Part shown: piece after piece, positions 1,506-54,914 of the stretch | Layout of the letters: each line of letters opens with the position of its first letter | Position numbering within the stretch: the first letter of the stretch is position 1 | IMG/VR virus record: IMGVR_UViG_3300024308_000018 | Coordinates: 1 to 64,000 of that record | Strand: one strand, 5' to 3' | DNA: 64,000 nucleotides | Position numbers and translations under genes: made by a program | The notes under the pieces: generated by a model | Databases searched by the model: none | What the model saw: the letters and a program-made list of their open reading frames with translations, nothing else | What the model was told of the DNA's origin: nothing

Positions 1506-1513
1506 GTTTACAG
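1506..1513 (-). promoter_or_regulatory. CTGTAAAC putative phage promoter element
   Basis: Intergenic, about 30 nt upstream of ATG 1473. The same motif recurs upstream of several other genes. Confidence 0.6.
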
Positions 1514-1524
1514 TATGGTGGCGG

Positions 1525-4500
1525 TTACCCGCCACTCAAATACCCATAAGGGGGACATTCAACGCACATGTTGACGCACAGATCTGGGGTAGCCCAGTAC
1601 CACTGACCCGTAGGCAGCTGACGCGCAACAACGTCGGACGGTTCCATCTTCCACACGCGCACCGCATTCTGCAACGCCTCCACTTCAGTCGCGAAGTATC
1701 CACGGTCAAGCAAGTCCGGATTCCCGTCGTGCGACGTTGCCAGATTGAACACAACCGTGCGGCCTTCGAACGACTGCGTTGCCGTCTGCACAAACTCACC
1801 AGTGCGGGGAGCGTGCGACGTTACGGCCGACGAAGCAGCGAATGACGAAGTGCTACCGAACCGCGAGAAGCTGTTAACGCGCACGGCCTTAGCGGGCTTC
1901 AACTCTGCGCTCTGGCTTTGCGATTCCACGTACTCAGCGGGCGCTGCGTCGACGGCTGCGGCTTTGCCGATCTGCGCGTAGTCAGCGGCGAGAGACAGCT
2001 GCCATGGTGCATACTGCACGTGCCACGTTACGCCGGGAATCGGGTCGGCCATCTCGTACAGTTTGGGGAAGACGAACGAACGCGACTCAATCTTGACGGT
2101 GCGCTTCTTCACCTGCCGATACAGAGCGCGGATCGGGATCGTGTCGGGCTGCCGGGCTTGCGCGCTACGTGCCTCAGTTCCCCAGTGCGTGAGGCCAAGA
2201 ATTTGCTTCTGCGCTGCGTTCAGTTCTAGGTACTGCTTCTTGGGCAATGGAGCGAACGTTGCATCCAACTCAAGCGTCATGGCTGTGCGGTAGACAGCAC
2301 CCGTGACATCCAATGCCTCGACGGTGTACGCTGGCTTCGGCGTTGCCCCGTTGGCGGCGAGCGATAGGCCCTCAGCTGCGCGCTGTGTTACAGCCTGCGC
2401 ATCCAGCCCCAGTGCGGCAGCGCGTTGTGCGCGAACCTCTGCGTACTTCGCGCTCTTGGTTTCCGCACGATTACGCTTCATGTGAGTGAAATTAGAGGAT
2501 TCAACATCGACATGTTGCATTTGGCGGAATTTCGGAGCCGACGGCGCATGGCTGTGTGCCGCATGCACGTTCGAGACGATTTGGAAATCGAGATCGTTGA
2601 ACGTCCGTACCTCCTGCCGCTTGGTGTGTTGCGCAGTAGAGCGCTCGACACTGCTGACAGTGAACTCGTTGTGGTCAAATGTCGGAGTCCGGATACCACC
2701 ATTCGTAGGCACCGCGTTGCGCTGGAACCCAACCCCTGCATAAGAGGACGAATCTGGGCGCGTGAACGACTGGTGCTTGCGGAGCGGATACAGCACAAAA
2801 GTGCTCGGCTCATGTTCAACGATTGGGGTGCGTGGGATAGTGAGCAGCGAATCGACGGGCAACACGATGTCGCGTGCCGGAACTTTCAGGAGCTGCTGTT
2901 TCTCCAACTTGATGGCGGTGACAATCGGGTCATAGTGCCAGCGGGCAACTACATCGCCGAAATCCAAAGTGCGACCGTCAGCGAACGGAATAGCGCGGTA
3001 GGTCAGTGGCTGATCAAGGTCAAACTCAACCTCTTCCTCTGCCCTGTTGAATCCGCGAGCATCGGTATCTGCTGGCAGTGCATCGCCATCGACGGAAACC
3101 CACACACCAGCCGGAGTGCGCGCCACGGCGTAGAATCCCTCGGGTATTGCATCGAAGGGGAACGCTGGCGACGTGCCGATAACGTAACGCGCTGCCGCAT
3201 CAGTTACAGGCTCGGCATCGAGGAAGTGGTCATCCGCCCAGATACGAAGCACGTGATCGGTGCGCCCGAACTTGTACGGGATTTCGTAGTGGGCGTGCTC
3301 GGTCACTTCGAACTTGATGTGAGCCGTCTGGCTGGGGCCCAACACAATGGATCGCAGTGGCGTATTTTGGAACTCGCCAAGATCGCTGGTCAACGTCAGG
3401 ATCACACGGCTATCATGCGTGTTCTCGATGGCACGACTGACGAACTTGCCCAGCGGCATGTACGCGCGTCCCTTGATGCCAACTGTGATCGGCTGCGCGT
3501 CCTGAATGGAGTTGAAGGTCACCCGCAGCGCGCCAGTGGTCACCCACCAGTTATCGACAAACTCGTCGCTCTGCGTAACGCGAATCGCCAAGCTCTGGCC
3601 GGGGCGAATCAGCGTACCGTCAGCAACCTCAACGCCATCGATCAGGATCACGCCATTACTGTGTACCGGAATAGCGGTGTCGTAAGCAGTAGGTGTCACG
3701 GCAACCGTGGCGCGCACTTCCTGCGGGCGGATGTTGTAGATGTCGTCGATTACGAACGTGTCGGGCAGCTCGTCGGGAATCATCGGTTCGTCGAGGGCAT
3801 TGCGGCCAACGGCAATGACGAACAGGTTGTCGCGAATGCTGTTGGTATCGACTACGATCTTGAGCTGCTGGCCGTTGCGTGCGCTGACCGTTGGTGCGTC
3901 ATTGACGGTAACTGTCGCGTTAGACCCTTCAGGCAGCGCGAGCGGGAACGCCTCGTTGGCGTCACCCACAACGTCCACCCACAACGTCATCCAGTTGCCA
4001 GCGGTTTCCTTCTTGGCAATCGTCAGGGTGGTGGCGTGCTTGCTGCTGTCAGTGCGCAGCGATACCACGGGAGCCATGGCACAAACAGCATGCGCAACGT
4101 TGTTGAGGTAGATGATGCCCAACAGCGTGCGACCATCCGGCAGATTGCCCGTCAGCGTTCCGGCCTCGTAGCGCTTACCGTCCGTGCTCAGGTACTTGCC
4201 AGACGCTGGGTAGAGCAGCTGGCCTGCACACGCGTCGTAGGAGACGGCAATCGACGTGGTGTCAGTCAGCAGCTTGCGATAAGCGCCGTGCATGAACCCA
4301 GTATCGGTTAAGCCGAGACCAGTATACGACTCGCCAGCAAACGTGGGAGTCAGTTCAGTGCCGTAGGTGAACGCGTTGTCGGTTACGGCATCGCTGACGC
4401 AGTAGACGCGGCTGGCATCTTGCGGATCGGGCTGCACACGTGTCCACGTGCGAGTTGAATCCAACAGGGTGACCGCACTTGGCGCATAGCTGGCCCCAAG

Positions 4501-5208
4501 AGCAACACGTTTCAGGCTACCATCGTCGGCAACAAACACGAACCCGGTGGCGATGCCGTTGGTGTAAGTGAATGCGCCGTTGCGTACCCCAACACCGATG
4601 TCGTGTGGCGCTAGGGGATTGAAGCTGTGGTCGTAGCGATGGAGGCGGCCCGCGACGTCAACGAACAAATGCGCACGCTGATCACTAGAGTTACGGGAGA
4701 TTCCGGTCGCGACTGTTACTTCACCGATATTGATGGAGCGGCCGACCGTGGGGACAGTCAGTGTTGAATTCGAGCGCAGGGCCCAAACGCGCTTGCCCGC
4801 AGCGTCTGGGACGAGGATGTAATCGAGCCAAGGATCCGCAGCCGTGGCCGGAGCAGTCAGCACAGTTTCGACATTGGTAACCAAGTTGATTACACAGATG
4901 CCGCTGCTGTTCCAGTCAAGGTGGTTACCGATGCCGCGCAGTGCCGCGAGCGACCAACGGTCAGCGGTCGGGCTCAGCACGCAGTAGGTTTCGATTCGAC
5001 GCCCGCTCTCACTTACCTCAACGAGTCGGGCTTGCAGCGCACGGTTTGCTTCAATCGTAATGTTTACGTTTTGCAGCCCCGTGAGTGTCAGCTCTTTGCT
5101 GCCGTTGGGGAATGTTGCGTTGCCCGTGATCCGATACGTTTTGGTTTGACCGATTGCACCCAGCGACAGAGGTTCAATGACCGCGCCGCTCGTTGTGATG
5201 TATTTCAT
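1525..5208 (-). CDS. Large tail fibre/virion structural protein (1227 aa)
   Basis: Long ORF at the distal end of the tail operon. Beta-rich, propeller-like N-terminal half, an extended low-complexity segment, and a C-terminal CxxxCxxC...GG. Confidence 0.6.
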   Translation of the reverse strand: MKYITTSGAVIEPLSLGAIGQTKTYRITGNATFPNGSKELTLTGLQNVNITIEANRALQARLVEVSESGRRIETYCVLSPTADRWSLAALRGIGNHLDWNSSGICVINLVTNVETVLTAPATAADPWLDYILVPDAAGKRVWALRSNSTLTVPTVGRSINIGEVTVATGISRNSSDQRAHLFVDVAGRLHRYDHSFNPLAPHDIGVGVRNGAFTYTNGIATGFVFVADDGSLKRVALGASYAPSAVTLLDSTRTWTRVQPDPQDASRVYCVSDAVTDNAFTYGTELTPTFAGESYTGLGLTDTGFMHGAYRKLLTDTTSIAVSYDACAGQLLYPASGKYLSTDGKRYEAGTLTGNLPDGRTLLGIIYLNNVAHAVCAMAPVVSLRTDSSKHATTLTIAKKETAGNWMTLWVDVVGDANEAFPLALPEGSNATVTVNDAPTVSARNGQQLKIVVDTNSIRDNLFVIAVGRNALDEPMIPDELPDTFVIDDIYNIRPQEVRATVAVTPTAYDTAIPVHSNGVILIDGVEVADGTLIRPGQSLAIRVTQSDEFVDNWWVTTGALRVTFNSIQDAQPITVGIKGRAYMPLGKFVSRAIENTHDSRVILTLTSDLGEFQNTPLRSIVLGPSQTAHIKFEVTEHAHYEIPYKFGRTDHVLRIWADDHFLDAEPVTDAAARYVIGTSPAFPFDAIPEGFYAVARTPAGVWVSVDGDALPADTDARGFNRAEEEVEFDLDQPLTYRAIPFADGRTLDFGDVVARWHYDPIVTAIKLEKQQLLKVPARDIVLPVDSLLTIPRTPIVEHEPSTFVLYPLRKHQSFTRPDSSSYAGVGFQRNAVPTNGGIRTPTFDHNEFTVSSVERSTAQHTKRQEVRTFNDLDFQIVSNVHAAHSHAPSAPKFRQMQHVDVESSNFTHMKRNRAETKSAKYAEVRAQRAAALGLDAQAVTQRAAEGLSLAANGATPKPAYTVEALDVTGAVYRTAMTLELDATFAPLPKKQYLELNAAQKQILGLTHWGTEARSAQARQPDTIPIRALYRQVKKRTVKIESRSFVFPKLYEMADPIPGVTWHVQYAPWQLSLAADYAQIGKAAAVDAAPAEYVESQSQSAELKPAKAVRVNSFSRFGSTSSFAASSAVTSHAPRTGEFVQTATQSFEGRTVVFNLATSHDGNPDLLDRGYFATEVEALQNAVRVWKMEPSDVVARQLPTGQWYWATPDLCVNMCVECPPYGYLSGG

Positions 5209-5223
5209 TCAGTCACCTCGGAG

Positions 5224-7372: not shown

Positions 7373-8188
7373 TTACTCCAAAACCAGATAGTTGATCGTT
7401 ACCGTCGGCTTGCTTGCTGCGGCACCAACGTTGGTGAAACGACAGTACAGCTGATCAGCGCTCGGCGAACGATTGACGAATACCGCGTAACGACGATGTT
7501 TGACTTTCTTGCCGTCCTGCACCGTGATGCCTTGGTCGGACATGACGTCTACCCCGCTCACAAAGCGATAGGGGTTTTCATCGTCGTAAGCAGCGGTAGA
7601 AAAGATTTGAAAGTCGATGTCTACCGCATTCAAAATTACGTCAATTAGCAGCAGAGCCCGCGACGCCTTGATAGAAAAGTCGTGCGCCTGCGAGGGCTGC
7701 AAGTAAGTTGGAGCTTCGTACTCCACAGACGAGCGCGTACCTGCTTTGTCCTGCCCACTGGTATCAATCCAAATGAGCGTTCCGTTAGCGCCAGACATCA
7801 AGGTGTAGCCAGCAGCTGGAGCGGGAGGAATCTTCTGGCTGTTGTGCAGCGAGATGATTTGCTTCTTGTCGACAGGGGTCAGGAGGATCGGCAGCTCTGC
7901 GCCAATCTTGTCTCCTGTATCCATGCCTTCAATCAACGCCCTCACGTCCTCTTCACTCATGCCCATCTTAAACTCTTCCCAGTTCGTTTTGTCTGGTTGG
8001 AGTTTGTAGATTTTGTCGTCAGCGATTACGTAAGCGAGCATCCCCACCTTCTTCGCGAACGGGTGTATCTTCGCAAGCTCGGCGAAGGTGGCCTTCACTT
8101 GAAAGCCACCCTTGACATAAATGTCCTCGACGAGAAACGGCACAGCCGTGTTCGAAGGCAGAAGGAATGCCGACATTGAAATCGGCAT
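7373..8188 (-). CDS. Putative tail fibre-associated protein
   Basis: 271 aa with RBS AGGAG. The N-terminal 'KGGF...K.GM.AYV..D.K.Y.L..D...W' module is typical of fibre proteins; tail operon context. Confidence 0.5.
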   Translation of the reverse strand: MPISMSAFLLPSNTAVPFLVEDIYVKGGFQVKATFAELAKIHPFAKKVGMLAYVIADDKIYKLQPDKTNWEEFKMGMSEEDVRALIEGMDTGDKIGAELPILLTPVDKKQIISLHNSQKIPPAPAAGYTLMSGANGTLIWIDTSGQDKAGTRSSVEYEAPTYLQPSQAHDFSIKASRALLLIDVILNAVDIDFQIFSTAAYDDENPYRFVSGVDVMSDQGITVQDGKKVKHRRYAVFVNRSPSADQLYCRFTNVGAAASKPTVTINYLVLE

Positions 8189-8199
8189 ACGCTTTCTCC

Positions 8200-11100
8200 T
8201 TATGGGTTACCAGACATCGGATCGGTTGCGTGGTACTGGAACTCGTAGGTGTATTCCATCTGGTTGAACGGGAAGTCGTTACGATACACCACGTAGTCGA
8301 CGCCATCGATCTTCCCTTCCCACGGGCCAGTAAAGTCCCATGCGTCCGGATAATCTTTCGCGCCATCCCACGAACCAGCGAAGCCGTACTGACCGCCCAC
8401 CGCAACGAAGCCCGGCTTGCCGTCAATAGAAGTTACGGAACGCACATATGCGTAACCGCACTTGGCTTTCGGCATCGCGAAGTATCCCCACTTGTCGTTA
8501 TCTTGGGTAGAAGAGAACGCAGGCATGTAGATACGGTCAGACACGGTGCCCGTGAGTTCTTGCGTCAGGCTATCGAGGAAAGCCTTGTTGAACCCAGAGG
8601 GACTGTTGACCCGCGAGACAATGCCGAACTTGATCTTGGATTCCCCAATGGGAGGAACGCTGGTGTCGGTGATAGTCACAGTCTTGGTCGCCGTCTTGGT
8701 AACGCCGCCCTCAGTGTACGAGGCGGTGATTACGATGTTGGTGTTGGCCGCTACTGCCGGAGTGGTCAGGATGCCAGACGAAGAGATCGACACACCAGTC
8801 AGGCCGCCCGCGTTGCTAATGCTCCACGTGGGGTTGACGTTCTTGGTGCTGTTGTCGCTCATGGTGGCAACGCAGGTGTAAGTTGCGGTGGCCGTACTCT
8901 CGGCGGCAGTGTTCGGGCCCTGAATCACGATGGAGCTGAGAACAAGCGGCACGTTCTTGATCACGATGTCCTTGTCCGCAGTCCAGCTCTTGCCTTCGGC
9001 GGTTACCGTACCACGAATGGTCAGCGGCACATCCGCAGAAACCTGACTCGCCGTTACAACGTTGCCGCTGATGGTGGCGTTACTGGTCGGCGTCACGAAC
9101 GTGAGCGCGGGCGTACTGAAGAGGGATTTGGATCCGTCTTCGAGCGTGGCTTCCATGGTGTAGGTGCCCGTCTGACCTTCGGTAATCTGTGCAGGGCCCA
9201 ACAGTGCGACCGACACAATATTGCCGAGGTTGACGATGTTCACGTTCAGCGTAGCAGTGAACGCTTGGCCCGCCTTCACGGCCTTCAGCTCAATGACGAC
9301 CGGAGTGTTCGCCAGAACTTTCGGCCAAGTCGCGAGACCAGCAGCCGAGATGGTGCCGACGCCAGACTTGATTGTCCACGAAGTGATGGAGTCGGGAGCA
9401 ACTTTGCTGCCGTCACTCATGGTAATCTGAGCGCTGTACTGCGACGTGGTGTTCTCGTTGGCAGTAGTCGGGCCGAGAATCTGCATGGACGCAGGCAACA
9501 CCGCACGATCCTTGATGGTTACGTCGATGGTATCGGACTTCACGATGCCGCCGATGTTCGCACGCAGCGAAATGGTGACCAGAGTGTCCTGAGTTACCTG
9601 CTGCGCGACCAGCATACCGACGTTGGAGATAGTGCTAGTGCCCGTTACCTGCCACTGCTCCATTTCACCGGGAGCTACACCACGCACGCTACCGTCAGAG
9701 AAGTAGGCGTCCGCTTGGTACTGCGTCGAGCTGCCTTCGTCTACGGAAGTCGCGCCCGTGATCACAATGCTTTCCAGCGTGATGATCACTTCGTTCTTGA
9801 CCATGAGGTCAAGGTGGCCTTGGATTGCGTAGCCCGCAACAGTCGCCTTACAGGTGACGGTGTTAGGAGTATCAATCGTTACCTCGGGCGCAGTGAACAC
9901 GCCGGACGCACCGGATGCCGCGATGCTGCCGACCAGAGTTTCCCAGCCAGTGAGTTCCGCAACCTTCAGGTCTTCCTTGCTGCCGTCGCTGTAGACAACT
10001 TTGGCAGTGTAGGTCGAACTGGTCTTCTCTTGTACCAGAGTAGCACCCAGAACTTGAATGGATTCCGGAATACGCTCGGGCGGGTTGCTCACGTTGCGCA
10101 GCGTGATATTCTTGGTTGCGGTGACCGTCACACCATTGACCATTTTGGTGGCCGTCAGGATTGCAGCTTCATCGGCAGCGACTTCGGCGGCTGCGACCTT
10201 GTTGCCAGTCACGGTGCCTTTCGGGTTGTCACACTTGAAGGAATCGACCGTGGTCTGTTCCTGTGTGCCGTCGTTGTACGCTACGTAGAACGCGTAAGCC
10301 TGTTCGGTGTGCTCGTCGATAACCGCAGCACCTTGGATGGTGAGGGTCACTGGCTTGAACTGGCGAATCAGCACGTCGTGGGTATCGGTCAGGCCGTCTT
10401 TCACGGCGGACAGAGTTACCACGGTGTCTTGGGTTACGCGCTTCGCAACACCGACGAACCCGTTGAGGGCCAGCGCATCGTTGTTGTTCGATGCGAACGT
10501 ATCGGGAATCAGAGCCGCGCTGCTGCCGTCGCTGTAGTGGCCGACGACGCCGAACGTGGTTTGATCCGCAGGCATCATCTCGGTGACACCGACGATCTCG
10601 ATACTGACCAGCGTGACGACGGTGGACTTAACGATGATGCGCAGCAGGTACTCGGCTTCTACCCACTTGTTGAACACGACGTCGCGCAACTTAACCTTGA
10701 CGGTCAGGTCGGTGTCGAACTGCAACTTCGGACAGGTGACAACGCCAGTAGCCGGATCGATGGTCACGCCAACGGTGTTCTGCTGAATGCTCCACACCAG
10801 ACCCTCGGGGTCAACTTCGGTGCGGTCAGTCCAGATAGCCGTGCCGATCAGATCCATCGTGCCGTTGTCGTTCATGTACGACGCGTTGCCCGGCAGGCTG
10901 ATGATTACGCGTTCGAGGCGCGGGCTTACCCAGTCGATGTGCTCGATGGTGGGCTTGCCCCAGCGTGCGTAATACACGTTGCGGTCGGTGGGATGGGCGC
11001 GAACCAGATACAGGATGTCACCAGCAGCCGGGGCGTTGCCCTCGATGATTGCGTAGTGAGTGGCGCTGATCTTTACCAGCTTGCGCGGGTAGTCCGGGTG

Positions 11101-11601
11101 GTCGTGCTCGGTCGGATAGCGCTTGTCCGACATTGCCGGATGGTTGGACACCACGACGACAGCATCTGCCTGCTCGGCTTCCAGCTGCACAACACCCATG
11201 ACTTTCGGGGTTGCGTGCGGGATGGTGGTGTCGGCAGGGTCGAGACCGATGTCGGCCGGATTCTCCACAACCGGACGGAAGAACTGATCTACAACGTAGA
11301 TTTGTGCCAGCTCAGTGATCTCTTCCCACGTGCCACGGTGCACGCCATCGGTGCTGTGACTGGTGCGGCGACGCAGCGAACGGAACTCTGGGGAGCCCGG
11401 ATTCATGTTCAGCCACAACGTGTTGTAGGGAACTTCACTGAAGGTCGGCTCAGTGAAAGAGCACACGATGATAAACGAGCGTGCGGTCTCAGTGTCGTTC
11501 TCCATCTGCGTCAGTTGAACTGGATGTGCGGGATTACAGCCCCGCACACGTGCCAGATCATACCAACGCGCAATGGCTTTGTTGAGCAATTCCATAATCA
11601 C
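8200..11601 (-). CDS. Tail fibre/whisker protein with about 8 tandem Ig-like domains
   Basis: About 90-aa repeats beginning L/P-x-S-I-x-I-x-G...E...Y...Y/M-S-D-G-S (8 counted). The N-terminal module is shared with the two upstream genes. Confidence 0.85.
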   Translation of the reverse strand: MIMELLNKAIARWYDLARVRGCNPAHPVQLTQMENDTETARSFIIVCSFTEPTFSEVPYNTLWLNMNPGSPEFRSLRRRTSHSTDGVHRGTWEEITELAQIYVVDQFFRPVVENPADIGLDPADTTIPHATPKVMGVVQLEAEQADAVVVVSNHPAMSDKRYPTEHDHPDYPRKLVKISATHYAIIEGNAPAAGDILYLVRAHPTDRNVYYARWGKPTIEHIDWVSPRLERVIISLPGNASYMNDNGTMDLIGTAIWTDRTEVDPEGLVWSIQQNTVGVTIDPATGVVTCPKLQFDTDLTVKVKLRDVVFNKWVEAEYLLRIIVKSTVVTLVSIEIVGVTEMMPADQTTFGVVGHYSDGSSAALIPDTFASNNNDALALNGFVGVAKRVTQDTVVTLSAVKDGLTDTHDVLIRQFKPVTLTIQGAAVIDEHTEQAYAFYVAYNDGTQEQTTVDSFKCDNPKGTVTGNKVAAAEVAADEAAILTATKMVNGVTVTATKNITLRNVSNPPERIPESIQVLGATLVQEKTSSTYTAKVVYSDGSKEDLKVAELTGWETLVGSIAASGASGVFTAPEVTIDTPNTVTCKATVAGYAIQGHLDLMVKNEVIITLESIVITGATSVDEGSSTQYQADAYFSDGSVRGVAPGEMEQWQVTGTSTISNVGMLVAQQVTQDTLVTISLRANIGGIVKSDTIDVTIKDRAVLPASMQILGPTTANENTTSQYSAQITMSDGSKVAPDSITSWTIKSGVGTISAAGLATWPKVLANTPVVIELKAVKAGQAFTATLNVNIVNLGNIVSVALLGPAQITEGQTGTYTMEATLEDGSKSLFSTPALTFVTPTSNATISGNVVTASQVSADVPLTIRGTVTAEGKSWTADKDIVIKNVPLVLSSIVIQGPNTAAESTATATYTCVATMSDNSTKNVNPTWSISNAGGLTGVSISSSGILTTPAVAANTNIVITASYTEGGVTKTATKTVTITDTSVPPIGESKIKFGIVSRVNSPSGFNKAFLDSLTQELTGTVSDRIYMPAFSSTQDNDKWGYFAMPKAKCGYAYVRSVTSIDGKPGFVAVGGQYGFAGSWDGAKDYPDAWDFTGPWEGKIDGVDYVVYRNDFPFNQMEYTYEFQYHATDPMSGNP

Positions 11602-12206
11602 CCCGTGATTTCAGTGCGGGCCAGTTTGCGCTGGTCAGCGGAAGTGGGAGAGGCTGCGACGAAAGTTGCACCTTGCGCTGCGGCCCCGTTGTCCATGTTG
11701 ACCACGCCGATAACGTCGACAAGCGGTTTCTCGGGGTGCATCTCGTCATGCGGCAGCGGGTAGCGCTCGTCGGTCAGGCGCGGGTCACTTGCGGCGACGA
11801 ATGCGGGCGCAGTCTCTTGAGCTGCCGGATGGTTGAGCTTGGCGATGCCGTAGCGCGTGGTGGTCGCGATGTCGACGTTGCCCAGATTCGGATCGCCGTC
11901 GGCCGCGTCGTAGTATTGCGCAGACCAGATACTCTCAACGCGCTCGACCAGCTCCCACGTGTTGTTCAGTCCGTTGCTCGGAACCTTGCTCACGCGACGC
12001 ACGAACTTCATGTAGGTATCGCGGTCGCGGTTCATGTCGAGCCACACGACGTTGAGCGGCAGCATGCGCGTTGGCTCTTCGTCAGATACCCACACCATTG
12101 CGCTGTTGTTCAGCACTGCGTTGTACTGGCGGAAGATCTTCGCGCTCTGCCCAACGGTGTAACCAGTTACGGTCAGGATGGCCTGCGCCATTTCACGAAT
12201 GTTCAT
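11598..12206 (-). CDS. Tail fibre-associated protein (paralogue family)
   Basis: Start revised to ATG 12206 (TGATG overlap, GGAGG RBS). Motifs WLDMN, AT...G, D.RLTDERYPLPHDEMHPEKP. Confidence 0.7.
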   Translation of the reverse strand: MNIREMAQAILTVTGYTVGQSAKIFRQYNAVLNNSAMVWVSDEEPTRMLPLNVVWLDMNRDRDTYMKFVRRVSKVPSNGLNNTWELVERVESIWSAQYYDAADGDPNLGNVDIATTTRYGIAKLNHPAAQETAPAFVAASDPRLTDERYPLPHDEMHPEKPLVDVIGVVNMDNGAAAQGATFVAASPTSADQRKLARTEITG

Positions 12207-15440: not shown

Positions 15441-15450
15441 GTAAATTAGC
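15441..15450 (-). promoter_or_regulatory. Putative late promoter (GCTAATTTAC)
   Basis: Lies between a terminator and the start of the tail operon. The TAATTT core recurs at 27656, 52437 and 53276. Confidence 0.6.
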
Positions 15451-20297: not shown

Positions 20298-20305
20298 GTT
20301 TACAG
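20298..20305 (-). promoter_or_regulatory. CTGTAAAC putative promoter element abutting the terminator
   Basis: Exact motif, intergenic, immediately 5' of the hairpin. Confidence 0.6.
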
Positions 20306-27655: not shown

Positions 27656-27666
27656 GCAAAATTAGC
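27656..27666 (-). promoter_or_regulatory. Putative late promoter (GCTAATTTTGC)
   Basis: Just downstream of a terminator and 25 nt before ATG 27630 (GAGG RBS). Confidence 0.6.
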
Positions 27667-29113: not shown

Positions 29114-29989
29114 CTAGAAGCGGTCGACGTCGTTACCAAGCACCGTAATGTGCGGACGGCGCTGTCGGGCAAACAACTCGACGGTCGGATACTTCTTGAG
29201 GTCATATAGACGGTTTACAGATTTGTAGAACGCTTCAGGCTTCTGACTGTGCTCACGCAACGCTTCGTAGATAACCTGCTTGACGTTGTTGTTGAAGCGC
29301 GGAATGCGCTTGCCGCGAACACCAATCAACACGAACTCGCTGTTGCTGCGGGTGTAGTGACCGCCGCCCATGAAGTCGATGTCGGTTTGCAGCTTGTTGC
29401 GCTTGACCCACACGAACGCGTTGGTCTTGTACTTGAAGCCCCACGCGCGCATTACGGCTTTCGCTTCATCCAGCAGCGGCCACGTTCCCCAGAGAAGAAG
29501 CACGGCATCTTTTGCCACAATGCTGTTCACATCGAGGTTCTTGATGTCGCGCAACTTCATGACCGGATACTTGAACTCGGCACCCCGCTCGCCAGCTGCC
29601 GCCTTGTCCTCGTACTCCCACGGAGGATCCGCGATTACGATGTTGAACTTCTTGCCTTTGCGAGCCAGCTTCTTGACTTGCTGGTGAATCGGCGACGCCT
29701 TCTCGTCGAAGGGCACGAACTTCTCGCGGCGAGTTTTCATCTGAGATGCGCAACCGTCAGCAATGATGTTCGCCACGGCGTGCAGCACCTTGCGCGGATT
29801 CGGCTCATTCTCCTGATAACGCAACTGGCGCAGAAGACGACGCATCGAGTCCTCTGTCCGGTTCGTTGGTTCGAGCAGCTGGTTGATGATCAAGGCCAAG
29901 TCGCATTCCGCATCAGTGGCAATGCCAATAACGCGGTTATCAACGTTCAGTGAGCCGAGCGTCCCATTCGTGTTACGCTCTATAATCAC
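29114..29989 (-). CDS. MT-A70 family N6-adenine methyltransferase
   Basis: Motifs IADPPW, LLLW, WGF.YKT..FVWVK, G.YTR.NSE, HSQKP and ELFAR. Confidence 0.92.
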   Translation of the reverse strand: MIIERNTNGTLGSLNVDNRVIGIATDAECDLALIINQLLEPTNRTEDSMRRLLRQLRYQENEPNPRKVLHAVANIIADGCASQMKTRREKFVPFDEKASPIHQQVKKLARKGKKFNIVIADPPWEYEDKAAAGERGAEFKYPVMKLRDIKNLDVNSIVAKDAVLLLWGTWPLLDEAKAVMRAWGFKYKTNAFVWVKRNKLQTDIDFMGGGHYTRSNSEFVLIGVRGKRIPRFNNNVKQVIYEALREHSQKPEAFYKSVNRLYDLKKYPTVELFARQRRPHITVLGNDVDRF

Positions 29990-31466: not shown

Positions 31467-33103
31467 CAGAAACTCCTAGACAAAATACTGTTCGCTTGTA
31501 CCTTGTTTACAGATCCTGCGCGCGGCACGTCGTAGATTGCCGAACCGTACTCGTTTTGCAGGTAGGCCCGCGACTTCTCGCTCAACTGGTGGTTGAACTT
31601 CATCGACGCCTGCAACGTTACCTTGAAGCAGCCCACGCTACGTTGCATGTACTTGTCGAGGAACATGCGAATGCGCGGTGTCGGCTTGTCTGGCATTGGC
31701 GTCAGGATCCGATACGACTCCTGCTCCCAGTTTGGCTCGTTCGACATCGGCATGATGTAGTAGAGGGTGTCCCAGCATGGAATGTTGATCCCCAGCTGAA
31801 TCAGACTACGGATACCGATAACGACTTTGATTTTGCCGCTACGTGCATCGTCCACAACCTGCTTCCGCTTCTTGGCTTCCTTGCTGCCGCCCATGAACAA
31901 CGCAACGACGGACGTGTCGTAACCGAGAGCGAAGTCAATCTCGCGCTTCAGCTTGTCGGCATGCTCCTTATACATGATCGGGATACACACCGAGCGTCCG
32001 GCCTTCACGTCCTTCACCGCCATCTCCACAATCTGCATGTTACGGTCTTCATGACGCGCAAGGAACTGGCAGAACTTCGTCCATCCGGCTTGGCCGTTGA
32101 ACTGGGCTTTGGTGCGCACAGTGTCGGGCGTTGGGTGCACAACGATGGTGGGGCACATGGCTTCCGCGCGGGTCGTCGCAATGACGGGCCCGATCAGGTT
32201 GTACGCCAGCACCTCGCGCTTGTTCTTCTTCTTCGGTGTTGCCGAGAGCCCGAACCGTGAGCGCGCTTTCATCTTACCCAGCACCTTGCTGAACTCGGGA
32301 GCACAAGTCCGATGCACTTCGTCGACTGCCAGTGTCCCGTAGTTCATGCGCAACAGCTTCAGGCGCTTGCGGGACATCTCGCTATCTTTGATCAGCTGCT
32401 GGTAGGTGACGAGGATAACTTGGAACGTCTCGTAATCCTTCAGCGTTTTCGGGAACCCGATCAGCTTGGTGCCTGCTTGCTCTTCCAACTCCTTCATGTT
32501 GGTCAGGGCTTCGAACGTTTCGAGGAAGCCGTCGAGAAAGTCCTTCTGATCCGCCATGATGATCGCGCGCTGCTTCATCCGACAGATTGCGGCTACCGCC
32601 ATGACGGTCTTGCCCGTCCGTGGTTTGGATTTCAGGATGCCCATCTTCTTCTTGCAGATGATGCGTACCGGATCCTCTTGGTAGTCAAACAGGTTGCCCG
32701 TGAACTTGAGCGGATAGGTAAACTGGCGCTTCGTGGTCTTGTCCACAAGTTCGAAGTCGTCGAAGTCAATGCCGAGCTTGTACTCAACGTTGTCGATGTC
32801 CCCGAGCGGCGTGGTGTAATACTCATTGCCGCTAACCATCCGGTGGCCCGCCATGCAGAACGTCTGCTTCAGGCCACCCCACTCGCACGCGTAGCAGTCC
32901 TCGCAGGGACGAACGTTGCGCATATCACAGCCACGACAGATGTTGTCGTCGAATTCGCAGTGAGTGTACGCTTTCTTCAGTCGGTCTTCGTCCACGAACC
33001 TGACTGGGATGTAGATCTTGTCGCTCAAGTAGATCTTGGGCATGCGTGGTTTGCGCGTGCTTGCTTTCTTCTTGGGCGCGGGCTTCTTGGATTTCTTTTC
33101 CAC
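31466..33103 (-). CDS. Superfamily 2 DNA helicase (UvsW/XPB-like) with an N-terminal Cys cluster
   Basis: Motifs PRTGKT, DEVH, GLSATP, GINIP and Q...R; CxxC...CxxC..C near the N-terminus. Confidence 0.9.
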   Translation of the reverse strand: MEKKSKKPAPKKKASTRKPRMPKIYLSDKIYIPVRFVDEDRLKKAYTHCEFDDNICRGCDMRNVRPCEDCYACEWGGLKQTFCMAGHRMVSGNEYYTTPLGDIDNVEYKLGIDFDDFELVDKTTKRQFTYPLKFTGNLFDYQEDPVRIICKKKMGILKSKPRTGKTVMAVAAICRMKQRAIIMADQKDFLDGFLETFEALTNMKELEEQAGTKLIGFPKTLKDYETFQVILVTYQQLIKDSEMSRKRLKLLRMNYGTLAVDEVHRTCAPEFSKVLGKMKARSRFGLSATPKKKNKREVLAYNLIGPVIATTRAEAMCPTIVVHPTPDTVRTKAQFNGQAGWTKFCQFLARHEDRNMQIVEMAVKDVKAGRSVCIPIMYKEHADKLKREIDFALGYDTSVVALFMGGSKEAKKRKQVVDDARSGKIKVVIGIRSLIQLGINIPCWDTLYYIMPMSNEPNWEQESYRILTPMPDKPTPRIRMFLDKYMQRSVGCFKVTLQASMKFNHQLSEKSRAYLQNEYGSAIYDVPRAGSVNKVQANSILSRSF

Positions 33104-34098: not shown

Positions 34099-35291
34099 CA
34101 GTTGGTGCAGTGCATGAGGTACTTGATACGGAACTCTTTCATGTCGTAGTCCAACATGAACGCTTTGTACTTGCCGACTGGGCCGAACACCCGCATCAGG
34201 TGATCGCACTCACCGCCCTTGATTCCATTACCCAATGCCTTGAGCAGAAGTTGGAACAGGCGGATGTCAGCATTGAACGTGAACGTATCCTTGGTTGCGA
34301 ACTTGATCTTCTCAACCAGAGACTGGCCGTCGGTGCTGAACTTCAACAGAGCTTGGCCGGACTTCGCACTGAAGTTGAACTTCACGCTCTGGCCCTTCAG
34401 TGCCTTGTTCGCACTGACCAGCGCAGCTAACGTATTCACCGCCAACACCATATCGTGATGTCCGTTACCCGTGGCAGTTGCGGAGCCCAGCGTATCCAAC
34501 GCGATGTCGAACTTCTGGAAGTCTTCTTTCGAGCTACGTACCGGAGGCAGCAGCACCAAGAAGTTGTCGGCACTTGCAACGAAGTTCGCACCGTTGACAT
34601 AGAACTGGGTGTCGGCATCGCCCACGACTTTGTAGAGCAGCTTCAGCATGTCGGAGCCCAAGCTGATCTTGGTGTCAGGCACGCGCTCTTTGAACTCGGC
34701 CTCGTACAGCGCACTGATAAAGTTGCTGCTGGTGACGACCGTCAGCTGGCCGGACTTCAACGTGATGTGCGAGTTAACACTGGCGTCGGTGTAGAGGTCG
34801 GGGATGTACGACATATCGACCGCACGCTTCAGCTCGCTAACCACGTTCGGCGGCAGGATGTCCGCGTTGTTCTTCACTTCGATATTACGGATCGTCATGT
34901 CCAGCGACATCAGCTGGTCTTGCGAAACGTGACGCACGCTGATCTTGAGCTTGCTGTTGCGGGACTTGGCCAACATCTCGCCGCGCGTGAACTCGAACTT
35001 GATCAGGTCTTTGCGGACAACCGGAGACAGCTGAGAGAAGTCCAGCAGTGCGGCACCAACGCCTTCAATGCCGGAAGCCGACAGCTCATTGATGATGAAG
35101 GTGTCGATGGTGCGTCCGATCAGATAGACCTTGCTGCCAGTGCACACCACCATGTTGAGGTCTTCGATCATCTTGTCAGCTTCACTGAACTTGATTACCT
35201 CGTCGCACAGTTTGAGGCTCTTGCCGAAGAGGTTGCCATCGAGAGTAAAGCTGAAGTCTTCAATGGTCTTTGGAATCTGCGGTAACTGCAT
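34098..35291 (-). CDS. Putative DNA sliding clamp (beta-clamp-like)
   Basis: About 397 aa with a three-fold repeating alpha/beta pattern and a C-terminal Y.LM strand, downstream of the DNA polymerase. Start revised to ATG 35291 (AAGGA RBS). Confidence 0.5.
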   Translation of the reverse strand: MQLPQIPKTIEDFSFTLDGNLFGKSLKLCDEVIKFSEADKMIEDLNMVVCTGSKVYLIGRTIDTFIINELSASGIEGVGAALLDFSQLSPVVRKDLIKFEFTRGEMLAKSRNSKLKISVRHVSQDQLMSLDMTIRNIEVKNNADILPPNVVSELKRAVDMSYIPDLYTDASVNSHITLKSGQLTVVTSSNFISALYEAEFKERVPDTKISLGSDMLKLLYKVVGDADTQFYVNGANFVASADNFLVLLPPVRSSKEDFQKFDIALDTLGSATATGNGHHDMVLAVNTLAALVSANKALKGQSVKFNFSAKSGQALLKFSTDGQSLVEKIKFATKDTFTFNADIRLFQLLLKALGNGIKGGECDHLMRVFGPVGKYKAFMLDYDMKEFRIKYLMHCTN

Positions 35292-35565
35292 CAGCCGGAT
35301 CCTTGTAGTTTTGTGGGTCGCATTTCTCTGGGACAAACACTGTCCGCCCTTGAATAACCTTTACAGCAATGCGCATTCCGGTTGGCCCGTAAATGCCATT
35401 GAGGAAACCAATGACGTTGAAGCGCAGTGCCTCGGCCCCGAGCTGGGTGTACTCGACAGCAAAGTGCGGAGTACGCGCGTCCCATGACGTATTGGTCATC
35501 GCAGCGAGTGACAGGTAATCAACCTCGCCAAGTTCATTCAGAAGATTGCACGCTTGTTCGATCAT
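35260..35565 (-). CDS. Hypothetical protein
   Basis: 101 aa with a strong GGAGG RBS. Confidence 0.65.
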   Translation of the reverse strand: MIEQACNLLNELGEVDYLSLAAMTNTSWDARTPHFAVEYTQLGAEALRFNVIGFLNGIYGPTGMRIAVKVIQGRTVFVPEKCDPQNYKDPADAVTADSKDH

Positions 35566-38776: not shown

Positions 38777-38784
38777 CTTTACAG
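38777..38784 (-). promoter_or_regulatory. CTGTAAAG putative promoter element for the polymerase
   Basis: Between a terminator and ATG 38746. Confidence 0.55.
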
Positions 38785-47181: not shown

Positions 47182-47958
47182 TTAGCCTCCAAGTACAGTC
47201 TGCGATTTGTCGAGCGAGTTTTCGTAAGAGCGCTGCATGCTGGTAGCAGCACTTGAAAACAGCTGATCCACTTTTGGCTTTAACGCGGCAGCCTGCTGGG
47301 GGTCAAGGTGGGAAGCGTGCAATCGGACTACGGCCTGATAGAGGTCGACCGTATCCTGCGAGATAGATTGCATCATTGGCGCAAGCACCTCGTCGTTCAA
47401 CAGCGAGCCCATGGCGCCAACGTCACGCAGCGCCCGCATGTCGGCAATCACTTCACGAATCTGGTTGTACGTCTGCATGAGCGGGTACACTTCGCGCCCG
47501 TTCTTGTTCCGTGTGATGTTGTCTTCCAGAATGTTCGCAATGTCCACCAGCTTGTCAAACATGTGGCGATACTGGGCAAGCTGCTCAGCGTCTTCACTGT
47601 TGTTGACCGGAATGCGTTCAATGACGGCTTCCGCTTCAGCCTTCAGCCTCTCCAATTCATCGCGGCGCTCGCTTGCCGAAGACGACGCGGTAATCTTGGC
47701 GATGGCCTTTTTGGTTGTAACCTTCTTCTTTACAGTTTCAGGTTCAACGTTTGCGGACTTGCGACGTTTGGGTTTGCGCTTAGGCATCGCCTCGTCGTCA
47801 GCTGGACGCTTCCGCTTGCGGTTCGGGGCGAACTCGTCGGCAACGCTCAGCTTCTTTTTCTTTTTGACACGCAGTGGCTTGGCGTCTTCCGCCTCGGGCT
47901 TACGCTTTTTTACCACGCGTTTCTTTTTGGCAAGTGCACCAAGTTCCACTTCGATCAT
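47182..47958 (-). CDS. Hypothetical protein with a K/R-rich N-terminus and helical C-domain
   Basis: 258 aa; adjacent to the HNH gene. Confidence 0.7.
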   Translation of the reverse strand: MIEVELGALAKKKRVVKKRKPEAEDAKPLRVKKKKKLSVADEFAPNRKRKRPADDEAMPKRKPKRRKSANVEPETVKKKVTTKKAIAKITASSSASERRDELERLKAEAEAVIERIPVNNSEDAEQLAQYRHMFDKLVDIANILEDNITRNKNGREVYPLMQTYNQIREVIADMRALRDVGAMGSLLNDEVLAPMMQSISQDTVDLYQAVVRLHASHLDPQQAAALKPKVDQLFSSAATSMQRSYENSLDKSQTVLGG

Positions 47959-52436: not shown

Positions 52437-52487
52437 GTAAATTATTGAGCAAGTCACAGTAGCCTTGCATACACGTTCTGTTTACAG
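52437..52487 (-). promoter_or_regulatory. Tandem putative promoters: CTGTAAAC (52480-52487) and ATAATTTAC (52437-52445)
   Basis: Both recurring motifs occur in one intergenic region downstream of a terminator. Confidence 0.6.
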
Positions 52488-52549: not shown

Positions 52550-52570
52550 GGTTCGCACTAGACCGGAAGG

Positions 52571-53227: not shown

Positions 53228-53275
53228 GATAGTGATTCCTGTAGTGATGCCGATTTCGGCGGTTACCTTTTGCAT

Positions 53276-53287
53276 GTAAAAATTAGT
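53276..53287 (-). promoter_or_regulatory. Putative late promoter (ACTAATTTTTAC)
   Basis: TAATTT core in AT-rich intergenic DNA upstream of the basic protein. Confidence 0.55.
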
Positions 53288-53310
53288 ATTGAATACAAAA
53301 TTTCTTCACG

Positions 53311-54357: not shown

Positions 54358-54362
54358 TGGTC

Positions 54363-54854
54363 TTATCTCAGGTAGGTGTTGATGTAATGGGGACGTACAG
54401 GTTGCTTACCCTTGATGTCGTTCACGGTTGCGGGTTCGCAGTAACGTTGGAAGGACATCAGCACGCAGTAGTCAGCCATCGTTCCGGATACTGACGCTTT
54501 GCAGAATTGCTGCCACTGGTTCGCTTGCACCAACTGCGCTTCCGTGCAGACAGTCAGCAACGGGACGTTCACGTTCGCGAGTCGGGTATCCGCATCTTGG
54601 TCTGCGACAGAAACTGTCTGCGCACTTGCTTGAGTTGCTGCCGTAGTTGCGATCACTGCTGCCGTTGCCAGCAGTGCAGCGTTGGTGCCACTGTTGGATT
54701 TTGCAACGTTGTTAACCTGCACTGGCTTTGCCGCTTGTACCGGAACCGGACGACTGATGGTAATCGGTCGGCTGATAGACACAGGGCGCGACACGACGGC
54801 GGCACCCGCAGTTGCGGACAGGAGAAGAACGGCGGCGACAACAAACTTTTTCAT
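54363..54854 (-). CDS. Secreted/periplasmic protein with a signal peptide
   Basis: Start revised to 54854 (GGAG RBS). MKKFVVAAVLLLSATAGA signal peptide; four Cys in the C-domain. Confidence 0.7.
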   Translation of the reverse strand: MKKFVVAAVLLLSATAGAAVVSRPVSISRPITISRPVPVQAAKPVQVNNVAKSNSGTNAALLATAAVIATTAATQASAQTVSVADQDADTRLANVNVPLLTVCTEAQLVQANQWQQFCKASVSGTMADYCVLMSFQRYCEPATVNDIKGKQPVRPHYINTYLR

Positions 54855-54867
54855 ATGGGCTCCAGAA

Positions 54868-54914
54868 AGTAGAAGAGGACGAACACCACTTGGCATCCGT
54901 CCTCTCGTTTACAG
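54868..54914 (-). promoter_or_regulatory. CTGTAAAC motif abutting a terminator-like hairpin
   Basis: CTGTAAAC (54907-54914) followed by gagaggacgga...ttcgtcctcttctacttt. Confidence 0.55.

What the first reader, a model, noticed from the sequence alone, without database searches (positions are those of the whole stretch)
1506..54914. Recurring CTGTAAA(C/G) motif on the coding strand: candidate phage-specific promoter
Seen on the minus strand at 1506, 20298, 29213, 31505, 35359, 38777, 47728, 52480 and 54907. Five copies are in the scarce intergenic DNA and three more lie within about 200 nt upstream of a start codon. Most precede replication or accessory genes. It does not match sigma70 TATAAT/TTGACA. 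Inference: recognised by a phage sigma or transcription factor.
Basis: partly seen in the sequence, partly recalled or inferred. Interest (0 to 1): 0.6.

Follow-up and report, generated by a model that had tools for sequence, protein, structure and literature searches.

The report
Conserved jumbo-phage middle-gene promoter motif
The recurring CTGTAAAC word is real, lies only on the transcribed strand just upstream of replication genes, and is almost certainly the phage-specific promoter already annotated (but never tested) in the related Pseudomonas phage Lu11, so it is a sound but largely ordinary finding.

Summary
Observation confirmed. All nine CTGTAAA(C/G) copies sit at the stated coordinates on the minus strand, against 2 expected. 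The window is the first 64 kb of a 229.7-kb jumbo phage genome. Genome-wide, CTGTAAAC occurs 25 times (4 expected), never antisense to genes, and 17 copies lie in the 9% non-coding DNA. It is the top enriched upstream 7-mer. The full motif is aAAtCTGTAAACAA, with no -35 block, typically 35-75 nt before a start codon.

The same core is the top intergenic motif in Dickeya phage JA11 and Pseudomonas phage Lu11. It is kept at syntenic sites, such as upstream of the SSB gene. Lu11's RefSeq record annotates it as a 'putative middle/late promoter'.

It precedes replication and nucleotide-metabolism genes. A second motif, (C)TAATTT(A), precedes head and tail genes.

The genome shows no detectable phage RNA polymerase. 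It has one RpoD-like sigma and a weak second sigma-like candidate.

Best reading: a -10-type promoter (TAAACA at -12 to -7, start about 15 nt after the C) read by host core polymerase plus a phage sigma-family factor. Which factor reads it is unresolved, and no transcription start data were available. Six window copies are convincing, one probable and two doubtful.

The parts
1506..1513 (-). CTGTAAAC copy (context ataCTGTAAACaa). It is intergenic, follows a short hairpin and lies 40 nt upstream of the ATG of the gene at 1..1473. Convincing.
20298..20305 (-). CTGTAAAC copy (context aatCTGTAAACaa). It is intergenic, just after the stop of the 735-aa gene. A terminator-like hairpin starts 8 nt after the motif's first base, and the ATG at 20250 is 55 nt away. 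Convincing.
29213..29220 (-). CTGTAAAC copy inside the 3' part of the gene at 29114-29989 (its L052 counterpart has an MT-A70 Pfam hit), 190 nt upstream of the exonuclease gene start at 29030. A CTGTAAA sits at about the same distance (158-164 nt) in relatives L052 and L053. Probable internal promoter.
31505..31512 (-). CTGTAAAC copy in the last codons of the helicase gene, 46 nt upstream of the ATG of the DNA-polymerase-like gene (30843-31466). It is kept in relatives L052, L053 and L054 at 36-49 nt while the flanks diverge. Convincing.
35359..35366 (-). CTGTAAAG copy whose flanks do not fit the consensus (attgCTGTAAAGgt). It lies inside a 101-aa ORF (35260-35565) that my gene caller did not keep, 75 nt upstream of the 397-aa gene. 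It is kept only in the close relative L052, where the coding flanks are kept too. Doubtful.
38777..38784 (-). CTGTAAAG copy (context gaaaaCTGTAAAGaa). It is intergenic, about 16 nt downstream of a terminator-like hairpin with a T-rich tail and about 40 nt upstream of the DNA polymerase A start. In relative L052 the site reads CTGTAAAT, 38 nt before the 1044-aa polymerase gene. Convincing.
47728..47735 (-). CTGTAAAG copy inside a lysine-rich coding stretch of the 258-aa gene, 554 nt from the next start. No relative covers this site. Doubtful; it may be chance.
52480..52487 (-). CTGTAAAC copy, intergenic and downstream of a terminator-like hairpin, 78 nt upstream of an in-frame ATG at 52409 that has a Shine-Dalgarno sequence. 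A TAATTTA motif lies between the two. Convincing.
54907..54914 (-). CTGTAAAC copy immediately after the stop of the 652-aa gene. A 15-pair terminator-like hairpin starts 8 nt after the motif's first base, and the ATG at 54854 is 60 nt away. Convincing.
15443..15448 (-). Copy of the second promoter-like motif, cgCTAATTTa. It follows a terminator and lies 53 nt upstream of a start. It belongs to the class that elsewhere precedes head and tail genes.
27659..27664 (-). Copy of the second motif, cgCTAATTTt. It follows a terminator and lies 34 nt upstream of the 238-aa gene. It is kept in relatives L052, L053 and L054.
52439..52444 (-). TAATTTA copy 35 nt upstream of the ATG at 52409, downstream of the CTGTAAAC copy at 52480. 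This gene carries both motif classes.

Best explanation
aAAtCTGTAAACAA is the core of a phage-specific, single-block promoter of the -10 type. It drives the replication, recombination and nucleotide-metabolism ('middle') genes of a Lu11/Yoloswag/JA11-type jumbo phage.

No RNA polymerase of the phage's own was detected, so the host core enzyme must be redirected by a phage protein of the sigma family.

In the proposed geometry TAAACA occupies -12 to -7. T-12 and A-11 are the two positions that sigma domain 2 reads and melts. CTG abuts the hexamer where an extended -10 element would sit, and the A-rich flank lies at -18 to -16. Transcription would start about 15 nt downstream of the C of CTG, giving leaders of roughly 20-60 nt.

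Some copies restart transcription just after a terminator. Others are placed so that the predicted start falls inside, or just before, a hairpin. Such a hairpin would stop upstream transcripts but would be incomplete, or 5'-terminal, in the new transcript.

Shown here: the motif's statistics, strand and position rules, conservation, gene class, and the presence of a sigma gene. Inferred: that it is a promoter, where transcription starts, and which factor reads it.
For: 1. Enrichment and specificity. The window holds 9 copies against 2.05 expected. Genome-wide there are 25 CTGTAAAC against 4.1 expected, 0 antisense and 17 intergenic. It is the top 7-mer in 100-nt upstream regions and in sense-oriented intergenic DNA. 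One-mismatch variants are not enriched.

2. Shape. There is one compact block of about 14 nt and no second block upstream or downstream. The median distance to the start codon is 50 nt.

3. Conservation. An independent de novo count puts CTGTAAA first in JA11 (38 against 3.4 expected; G+C 44.5%) and in Lu11 (26 against 2.3; G+C 50.9%). The motif is kept upstream of the SSB gene in JA11, Yoloswag, Lu11 and three metagenomic relatives. It is also kept upstream of the DNA polymerase, the polymerase-like gene and the primase.

4. Precedent. Lu11's RefSeq record annotates aaaaCTGTAAAT-N5-GTA as a 'putative middle/late promoter', including the copy between the sigma and SSB genes.

5. A lone minus-strand primase gene inside a plus-strand block needs its own promoter. 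CTGTAAAC is one of two conserved islands upstream of it; the other reads as CTAATTT on the plus strand.

6. Several copies lie just downstream of terminator-like hairpins, where there is little RNA left to act on.

7. Start-site geometry. A purine at +15 (C of CTG = 0) is found in 0.67, 0.84 and 0.93 of sites in the three genomes. Lu11 has G-T-A at +13 to +15.

8. Machinery. No Pfam hit to beta or beta' subunits. An RpoD-like sigma is present: phrog_17569 at E 2.6e-88, profile against solved RpoD at E 3e-5, and a model that Foldseek matches to sigma70 chains, best the domain-2 complex 5yix. It keeps the Y/W/W and T residues that align with sigma70 region 2.3-2.4. Published comparative genomics places Lu11 and PaBG among jumbo phages that lack a polymerase but encode sigma factors (PMC7824862).

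9. Canonical sigma70-type promoters are not enriched in 44-64 kb (5 found, 8.1 expected).
Against: No transcription start data exist for this genome or, as far as the held literature shows, for any relative.

The reading factor is unidentified. The RpoD-like sigma gene itself lies behind a CTGTAAA motif: directly in JA11 and Yoloswag, and via an acetyltransferase gene and after a terminator here. That fits a cascade in which this sigma reads the next class rather than this one.

TAAACA lacks the T at -7 that sigma70-type -10 elements have.

A few copies are so close to the called start codon (17-22 nt) that the predicted transcript would lack a ribosome-binding site, unless the start codon is miscalled.

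The downstream G-T-A seen in Lu11 is weak here.

The search for a T7-type polymerase was uninformative, because its control found nothing anywhere.
Confidence: 0.72

Rival explanations
1. The motif is the operator of a phage DNA-binding regulator (activator or repressor) that sits next to promoters. It would not itself be the promoter element read by a sigma factor.
For: The word is short, highly specific and invariant, as for a sequence-specific DNA-binding protein. A small protein with a weak sigma region 4 / helix-turn-helix match lies directly behind one copy at genome 190760.
Against: No second conserved promoter block accompanies the motif at any fixed distance. The motif is not palindromic and is strictly one-stranded, which is unusual for dimeric operators. 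Its position relative to start codons, and the purine at +15, fit a -10 element.
Confidence: 0.1
2. The motif acts in RNA, as a recognition or cleavage site for a host or phage endoribonuclease or RNA-binding protein that processes polycistronic transcripts between genes.
For: It is strand-specific, A/U-rich, intergenic, and in several cases directly next to a stable hairpin. That arrangement is typical of processing sites.
Against: Several copies lie immediately downstream of terminator-like hairpins. One serves a lone divergent gene where no upstream transcript in that direction is expected. The distance to hairpins is not constant, and many copies have no hairpin. No Rfam family matches.
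Confidence: 0.08
3. The motif is read by an unmodified host holoenzyme carrying a host alternative sigma, not by a phage factor.
For: The T-12/A-11 geometry is generic to sigma70-family -10 elements. TCTG recalls the -10 of AlgU/RpoE-type promoters; this comparison is from my own knowledge and was not tested here.
Against: The same motif is used by relatives that infect Pseudomonas, Dickeya and Erwinia, and it travels with a conserved phage sigma gene. No -35 element of the kind that host alternative sigmas need is present.
Confidence: 0.05
4. The recurrence is a by-product of composition, codon usage or stop-codon context (CTG-TAA) and has no function.
For: The motif contains TAA. At the sigma gene it supplies the stop codon. 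The G variant alone is not enriched.
Against: The C form shows six-fold enrichment, no antisense copies and 17 of 25 copies in 8.7% of the genome. It ranks first in three genomes of different G+C and is kept in intergenic DNA away from stop codons.
Confidence: 0.01

Closest known systems
Putative middle/late promoter of Pseudomonas phage Lu11 (RefSeq NC_017972 regulatory features; genome announcement by Adriaenssens et al. 2012, not held in the library)
   Same: The core and flank are the same (aaaACTGTAAA). It is on the coding strand at the same distance from start codons, and the same syntenic copy lies between the sigma and SSB genes. The phage family is the same, sharing terminase, sigma, SSB and UvsX homologues, with sigma-SSB-UvsX in the same order.
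   Different: Position 8 is C here and T in Lu11. The downstream G-T-A of the Lu11 consensus is weak here. In Lu11 it is only a computational annotation, so membership rests on sequence and context, not on shown function.
T4 late promoters (TATAAATA at -10, read by gp55 with gp33 and the sliding clamp)
   Same: It is a single compact -10-type block with no -35 element, read by host core polymerase with a phage sigma-family protein. TGTAAAC and TATAAAT agree at 5 of 7 positions (my own comparison with the textbook consensus).
   Different: The motif here precedes replication genes, not late structural genes. No gp55-type sigma was found (phrog_234 and phrog_12791: no match). In this phage the late-gene role seems to belong to a different word, TAATTT(A).
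Extended -10 promoters of sigma70 (TGnTATAAT)
   Same: A TG sits just upstream of a hexamer that starts TA, and no -35 element is required. The phage sigma keeps the region 2.3-2.4 aromatic residues that handle -11A.
   Different: The TG abuts the hexamer with no spacer base. The hexamer ends in A, not T. A real extended -10 class (TGgTAAACT, TGgTATAAT) exists separately in this genome, in a seven-copy repeat outside the window.
Sigma cascades of large virulent phages such as Bacillus phage SPO1 (gp28, then gp33/34); comparison from my own knowledge
   Same: Successive gene classes are marked by different promoter words and read by the host core enzyme with phage sigmas. Here there are two phage-specific words and up to two sigma-like proteins.
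   Different: The sigmas are unrelated in sequence. The pairing of factor and word is unknown here, and the second sigma candidate is only weakly supported.
Promoters of phage-encoded multisubunit polymerases (phiKZ, AR9)
   Same: They are short phage-specific words in jumbo phage intergenic DNA.
   Different: No beta or beta' homologue is detectable here. This phage group is described as lacking its own polymerase (PMC7824862).

Membership tests
Lu11-type putative middle/late promoter (CTGTAAAT-N5-GTA) | Core CTGTAAA with an A-rich 5' flank on the transcribed strand | tested here: met
   The logo is aAAtCTGTAAACAA. CTGTAAA is 35 sense to 2 antisense; CTGTAAAC has no antisense copy.
Lu11-type putative middle/late promoter (CTGTAAAT-N5-GTA) | Sited in intergenic DNA a few tens of nt upstream of start codons | tested here: met
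   17 of 25 copies are fully intergenic. The median distance to the start is 50 nt here, 45 nt in Lu11 and 53 nt in JA11.
Lu11-type putative middle/late promoter (CTGTAAAT-N5-GTA) | Syntenic copies in related phages, for example between the sigma and SSB genes | tested here: met
   The copy is kept in Lu11, JA11, Yoloswag, L019, L021 and L022. Variant words stand at this site in PaBG, Afa-NA1 and PhiXhv-12.
Lu11-type putative middle/late promoter (CTGTAAAT-N5-GTA) | T at position 8 and G-T-A at +13 to +15 | tested here: not met
   Position 8 is C in 25 of 39 copies. At +13 to +15 there is only a weak purine preference (0.67 at +15). This is a variant of the consensus, not a different element.
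Lu11-type putative middle/late promoter (CTGTAAAT-N5-GTA) | Host phage belongs to the Lu11/PaBG/Yoloswag/JA11 lineage | tested here: met
   Terminase is 44-49% identical to relatives and sigma 31-43%. The sigma-SSB-UvsX gene order is kept.
Lu11-type putative middle/late promoter (CTGTAAAT-N5-GTA) | Transcripts start just downstream | not testable with these tools
No transcript mapping for this lineage was found in the library.
Canonical sigma70 promoter (-35 TTGACA, -10 TATAAT) | A -35 element 16-18 nt upstream of the -10 element | tested here: not met
   No information content is seen upstream of -4 relative to the motif.
Canonical sigma70 promoter (-35 TTGACA, -10 TATAAT) | A -10 hexamer with T-12, A-11 and T-7 | tested here: inconclusive
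   TAAACA has T and A at the first two positions but A at the last. The alignment to -12 to -7 rests on an inferred start site.
T4-type late promoter system | gp55-type minimal sigma encoded by the phage | tested here: not met
   phrog_234 and phrog_12791 (the families that T4 gp55 hits) have no match in the genome.
T4-type late promoter system | Precedes late (virion) genes | tested here: not met
   Genes downstream of the motif are DNA polymerase, exonuclease, primase, SSB, dUTPase and dCMP deaminase. Head, sheath and fibre genes carry TAATTT instead.
Promoters of phage-encoded RNA polymerases (phiKZ/AR9 multisubunit; T7-like single subunit) | The phage encodes the polymerase | tested here: not met
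   PF00562 and PF00623 have no match although the controls worked. The PF00940 search was uninformative because its control found nothing. Very divergent polymerases among the large unannotated proteins are not excluded.

The most novel reading that the evidence does not exclude
The phage runs a three-step transcription cascade with two phage sigma-like proteins.

Step 1: host-type extended -10 promoters, in a seven-copy repeat at 87-132 kb, drive early genes. These may include a very divergent sigma-like protein (genome 138858-139973, the homologue of PaBG gp112).

Step 2: that factor, not the RpoD-like sigma, reads CTGTAAAC and switches on the replication genes together with the RpoD-like sigma gene.

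Step 3: the RpoD-like sigma then reads TAATTT(A), which has T-12, A-11 and T-7, at head and tail genes.

In addition, several CTGTAAAC promoters are built into the 5' arm of the preceding gene's terminator, so that the terminator acts only on upstream transcripts.
Probability: 0.25. Interest if true: 0.55.

Novelty: new member of a known kind. Interest (0 to 1): 0.35.

Why it matters
Jumbo phages that lack their own RNA polymerase are thought to reprogramme the host enzyme with phage sigma factors. A 2026 review still states this only as 'likely' (PMC13282480), and the library search found no promoter mapping for this lineage.

This work adds four things.
- The CTGTAAA word annotated once in Lu11 is the dominant intergenic signal across the lineage, from Pseudomonas to Erwinia and Dickeya phages and uncultivated relatives.
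- It marks the replication gene class.
- A second conserved word, not annotated at the two Lu11 sites checked, marks the virion genes.
- The motif's geometry predicts a start site that can be tested.

Practically, the two words give a quick way to assign temporal classes and operon boundaries in unannotated genomes of this family. They also give defined templates for testing what the phage sigma proteins recognise. It is a useful refinement, not a surprise.

Tried and rejected
- Close relatives in IMG/VR through the sigma and DNA polymerase proteins: none found. Relatives came instead from the protein word search and contig look-ups.
- The Lu11 genome announcement is not held by DOI or PMC id. 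The claim about Lu11 therefore rests on the RefSeq feature table.
- Full-text searches for the motif word returned only unrelated primer sequences.
- Own RNA polymerase: Pfam beta and beta' families gave no hit. The T7-type search was uninformative.
- Other sigma families (Sigma70_r4, ECF TIGR02937): no hit. Sigma70_r4_2 gave only a 12.9-bit match in a small protein at genome 190346-190738.
- T4 gp55-type sigma: none.
- Second sigma candidate (homologue of PaBG gp112): no Pfam hit or hit to solved structures by sequence. Foldseek was not significant. VIA-align gave a best Z of 8.1 to the sigma-2 domain of an ECF sigma, and roughly 20 of its top 50 matches were sigma-factor chains. That is within the range common for helical bundles. 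hhalign against the RpoD-like family gave a probability of 2%. This candidate is left as inconclusive.
- Known RNA families and tRNAs at or near the sites: none.
- A fixed motif-to-hairpin distance as evidence for an RNA element: rejected. Hairpins occur before, after or not at all.
- Long 'non-coding' stretches after the copies at genome 67553 and 70503: probably small genes that my simple gene caller missed. No claim is made.

Full report
**What the window is**

The 64-kb window is the first part of a single 229,746-bp contig with G+C 56.6%. It is an IMG/VR virus record that CheckV rates as complete.

All window genes are on the minus strand. The genome has three large strand blocks: minus to 72 kb, plus from 72 to 186 kb, and minus from 186 to 229 kb.

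The terminase and sigma proteins place it among jumbo myoviruses. [quoted passage not shown] DNA similarity to any deposited phage is limited to about 575 bases at roughly 75% identity, annotated as DNA polymerase I in one of those phages.

**The observation**

Shuffles gave 2.05 on average.

In the whole genome there are 32 such words. Fifteen are on the plus strand, all inside or beside the plus-strand gene blocks. Seventeen are on the minus strand, all inside or beside minus-strand genes. None is antisense to a gene.

CTGTAAAC alone occurs 25 times against 4.1 expected. Seventeen copies are fully inside the 8.7% of the genome that is non-coding. Every one-mismatch variant is at background level and shows no strand bias.

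CTGTAAA is the most enriched 7-mer in the 100 nt upstream of genes and in sense-oriented intergenic DNA, ahead of the ribosome-binding words.

The aligned copies give aAAtCTGTAAACAA, with nothing conserved further upstream or downstream. Most copies lie 35-75 nt before a start codon, with a median of 50 nt.

The G variant is not enriched on its own (7 against 3.6 expected). In the window, 38777 is convincing, while 35359 and 47728 are doubtful.

**Conservation**

I fetched the whole genomes of JA11 (G+C 44.5%) and Lu11 (G+C 50.9%), called genes with the same simple method, and repeated the blind 7-mer count. CTGTAAA came first in both. JA11 had 38 sense intergenic copies against 3.4 expected, and Lu11 had 26 against 2.3. 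Sense to antisense ratios were 66:11 and 52:8.

Yoloswag is also enriched, with 73 copies against 29 for a reversed-word control. PaBG and a Xanthomonas phage are not.

At the syntenic site upstream of the SSB gene the word is kept in JA11, Yoloswag, Lu11 and three metagenomic relatives with 55-83% sigma identity, while the flanks differ. PaBG has CTGTCAA there, Afa-NA1 has CTGTTAA and the Xanthomonas phage has TGTAAAC.

Relatives that cover the window keep three of its copies. These are the copies upstream of the DNA polymerase (38777), of the polymerase-like gene (31505, in three relatives at 36-49 nt), and about 160 nt upstream of the exonuclease-type gene (29213).

Upstream of the lone, oppositely oriented primase gene, CTGTAAA is one of two conserved islands in three genomes.

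**What is already known**

Lu11's RefSeq record carries regulatory features called 'putative middle/late promoter'. Their sequence is aaaaCTGTAAAT-N5-GTA, and one lies between the sigma and SSB genes. The element is therefore a known computational annotation in one relative.

I found no transcript mapping for this lineage in the held literature. A 2026 review says only that polymerase-lacking jumbo phages 'likely' use their sigma homologues at phage-specific promoters. The PaBG paper discusses the sigma gene but not promoters.

**Gene class**

Genes directly downstream of the motif include:
- DNA polymerase A, a polymerase-like protein and an exonuclease in the window;
- primase, SSB, two GNAT acetyltransferases, dUTPase and dCMP deaminase elsewhere.

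The motif is absent from the virion-gene blocks at 150-190 kb and 210-229 kb.

Those blocks carry a second word, (C)TAATTT(A). It is 26 sense to 1 antisense. All 12 TAATTTA copies are sense and 11 lie in the sense-oriented intergenic set, and the word typically sits 10-70 nt before a start codon. It stands in front of the major head, tail sheath, tail fibre and other virion genes. It ranks next after the CTGTAAA-derived words in all three genomes.

It is kept at syntenic sites: before the small gene after the terminase here and in Lu11, and at window 27659-27664 in three relatives. The Lu11 record does not annotate it at the two sites checked.

Four copies are in the window: 15443-15448, 27659-27664, 52439-52444 and 53280-53285.

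**Machinery**

Pfam families for the beta and beta' subunits find nothing, although their controls worked. The T7-type search was uninformative.

The genome encodes a 330-345-aa sigma at 81112-82104, outside the window. It matches phrog_17569 at E 2.6e-88. A family profile matches solved RpoD sigmas over regions 1.2-2.4 at E 3e-5. The AlphaFold model (pLDDT 81) is matched by Foldseek to sigma70 chains, best the domain-2 complex 5yix. After that domain comes a low-confidence segment that is nevertheless conserved in sequence, and then three short C-terminal helices. No region 4 family matches this protein. The aromatic residues and the threonine that align with sigma70 region 2.3-2.4 are kept.

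A homologue of PaBG gp112, which the PaBG authors flagged as a possible second sigma, lies at 138858-139973. Its model gives only suggestive sigma-2 matches (VIA-align Z 8.1; Foldseek not significant; hhalign to the first sigma family negative), so it remains a candidate.

No T4 gp55-type sigma is present.

**Mechanism proposed**

The motif is a single block, and the logos of three genomes show a purine preference 15 nt after the C (0.67, 0.84 and 0.93). Lu11 adds G-T-A at +13 to +15.

A start at +15 puts TAAA(C/T)A at -12 to -7. That is the standard place of a -10 hexamer, with the T and A that sigma domain 2 reads. CTG abuts it, and the A-rich flank lies just upstream. This is inference from geometry, not a measured start.

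The surroundings fit a promoter. Several copies lie about 15-40 nt after a terminator-like hairpin (38777, 52480, and genome 67553 and 80124). Others are followed by a hairpin that begins 8-20 nt after the motif's first base (20298, 54907, and genome 85842, 190760, 128244, 135915). The predicted start then falls inside or just before the hairpin. Such a hairpin could stop transcripts from the upstream gene while being incomplete, or merely a 5' stem-loop, in the new transcript. That last point is my inference.

**Which factor reads it**

This is open. The RpoD-like sigma gene itself lies behind a CTGTAAA copy. The copy is directly upstream in JA11 and Yoloswag. Here it lies upstream of the acetyltransferase-sigma pair, right after a terminator.

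That favours a cascade in which this sigma is a product of the CTGTAAA class and reads the later TAATTT class. TAATTT also has the T at the last hexamer position. Autoregulation cannot be excluded.

The alternative readers are the gp112-like protein or an unrecognised factor.

**Rivals**

The alternatives considered were an operator for a DNA-binding regulator, an RNA processing site, use by a host alternative sigma, and chance. Each is treated in the rival entries. None fits the combination of strict strand bias, lack of a partner block, placement after terminators and at a divergent gene, and cross-host conservation as well as a promoter does.

**Verdict**

Of the nine window copies:
- six are convincing (1506, 20298, 31505, 38777, 52480, 54907);
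- one is probable (29213);
- two are doubtful (35359, 47728).

The element is a new member, with C instead of T at position 8, of a promoter type already annotated computationally in Lu11.

What this work adds is lineage-wide conservation, assignment of the motif to the replication gene class, a second conserved late-gene word, and a testable start-site model.

Noticed in passing
window 15443-15448, 27659-27664, 52439-52444, 53280-53285 (minus strand); genome-wide 29 copies: A second strand-specific upstream word, (C)TAATTT(A), precedes the major head, tail sheath, tail fibre and other virion genes. It ranks next after the CTGTAAA-derived words among enriched intergenic 7-mers in this genome, JA11 and Lu11. 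The Lu11 record does not annotate it at the two sites checked. It is probably the late promoter class.
   Followed up: yes
outside the window: genome 87034, 91824, 102667, 106774, 115220, 122067, 131756 (plus strand): There are seven copies of a roughly 70-nt intergenic repeat. Each has TGACGAAAACCGGACTAG, a variable stretch, then TTGGTAAACTGTTTACAAGGTGAGGGG, 50-98 nt before a start codon. The repeat contains an extended -10-like TGgTAAACT (TGgTATAAT in one copy) and the palindrome GTAAAC-T-GTTTAC. These are possibly host-sigma70 early promoters with a conserved upstream block.
   Followed up: partly
outside the window: genome 138858-139973 (plus strand; L005:14858-15970): A 371-aa protein is homologous to PaBG gp112 (phrog_19229, unknown function). 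Its model has a helical core whose best structural matches are sigma-2 domains of ECF and other sigma factors (Z 8.1), followed by a linker and a C-terminal helical domain. It is a possible second, very divergent sigma, but this is not established.
   Followed up: partly
outside the window: genome 76767-77102 (divergent region upstream of the primase gene): CTGTAAAC on the minus strand and CTAATTT on the plus strand lie back to back, about 11 bp apart. Both are kept in relatives L019 and L021. In L019 an 85-aa plus-strand gene follows, which my gene caller probably missed here. These are possibly overlapping divergent promoters of two temporal classes.
   Followed up: partly
window 8167-11763 (+) versus 8200-11601 (-): Two very long ORFs lie on opposite strands over the same DNA (1198 and 1133 aa). 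The minus-strand product matches a tail-protein family at E 3e-138 and has an HNH-like N-terminus. The plus-strand ORF is therefore most likely a shadow frame of G+C-rich coding DNA.
   Followed up: partly
relatives L020, L022, L054 and proteins P0049, P0052, P0054; own genome 83482-85839: Orthologous replication genes differ by mobile insertions between relatives. The helicase carries an intein in some. The primase locus holds a 673-aa product with a LAGLIDADG domain where another relative has 348 aa. The RecA/UvsX product has HINT and LAGLIDADG domains in one relative. This genome's UvsX-like gene is 785 aa, with the recombinase match confined to about the first 320 residues, so it may also carry an insertion.
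   Followed up: no
window 26917-27630 and 29114-29989 (minus strand); relatives L052, L054: By position in the 88% relative, these window genes correspond to an ART-PolyVal (ADP-ribosyltransferase) domain protein and an MT-A70 methyltransferase. Another relative carries Tad2-like and Acb2/Tad1-like genes nearby. This suggests a host-takeover or anti-defence cluster among the replication genes.
   Followed up: no
window 1-1473 (minus strand): The first gene runs off the start of the contig. The contig is classed as linear without end repeats, yet 100% complete. Its ends are therefore probably arbitrary (a circularly permuted or cut assembly).
   Followed up: no
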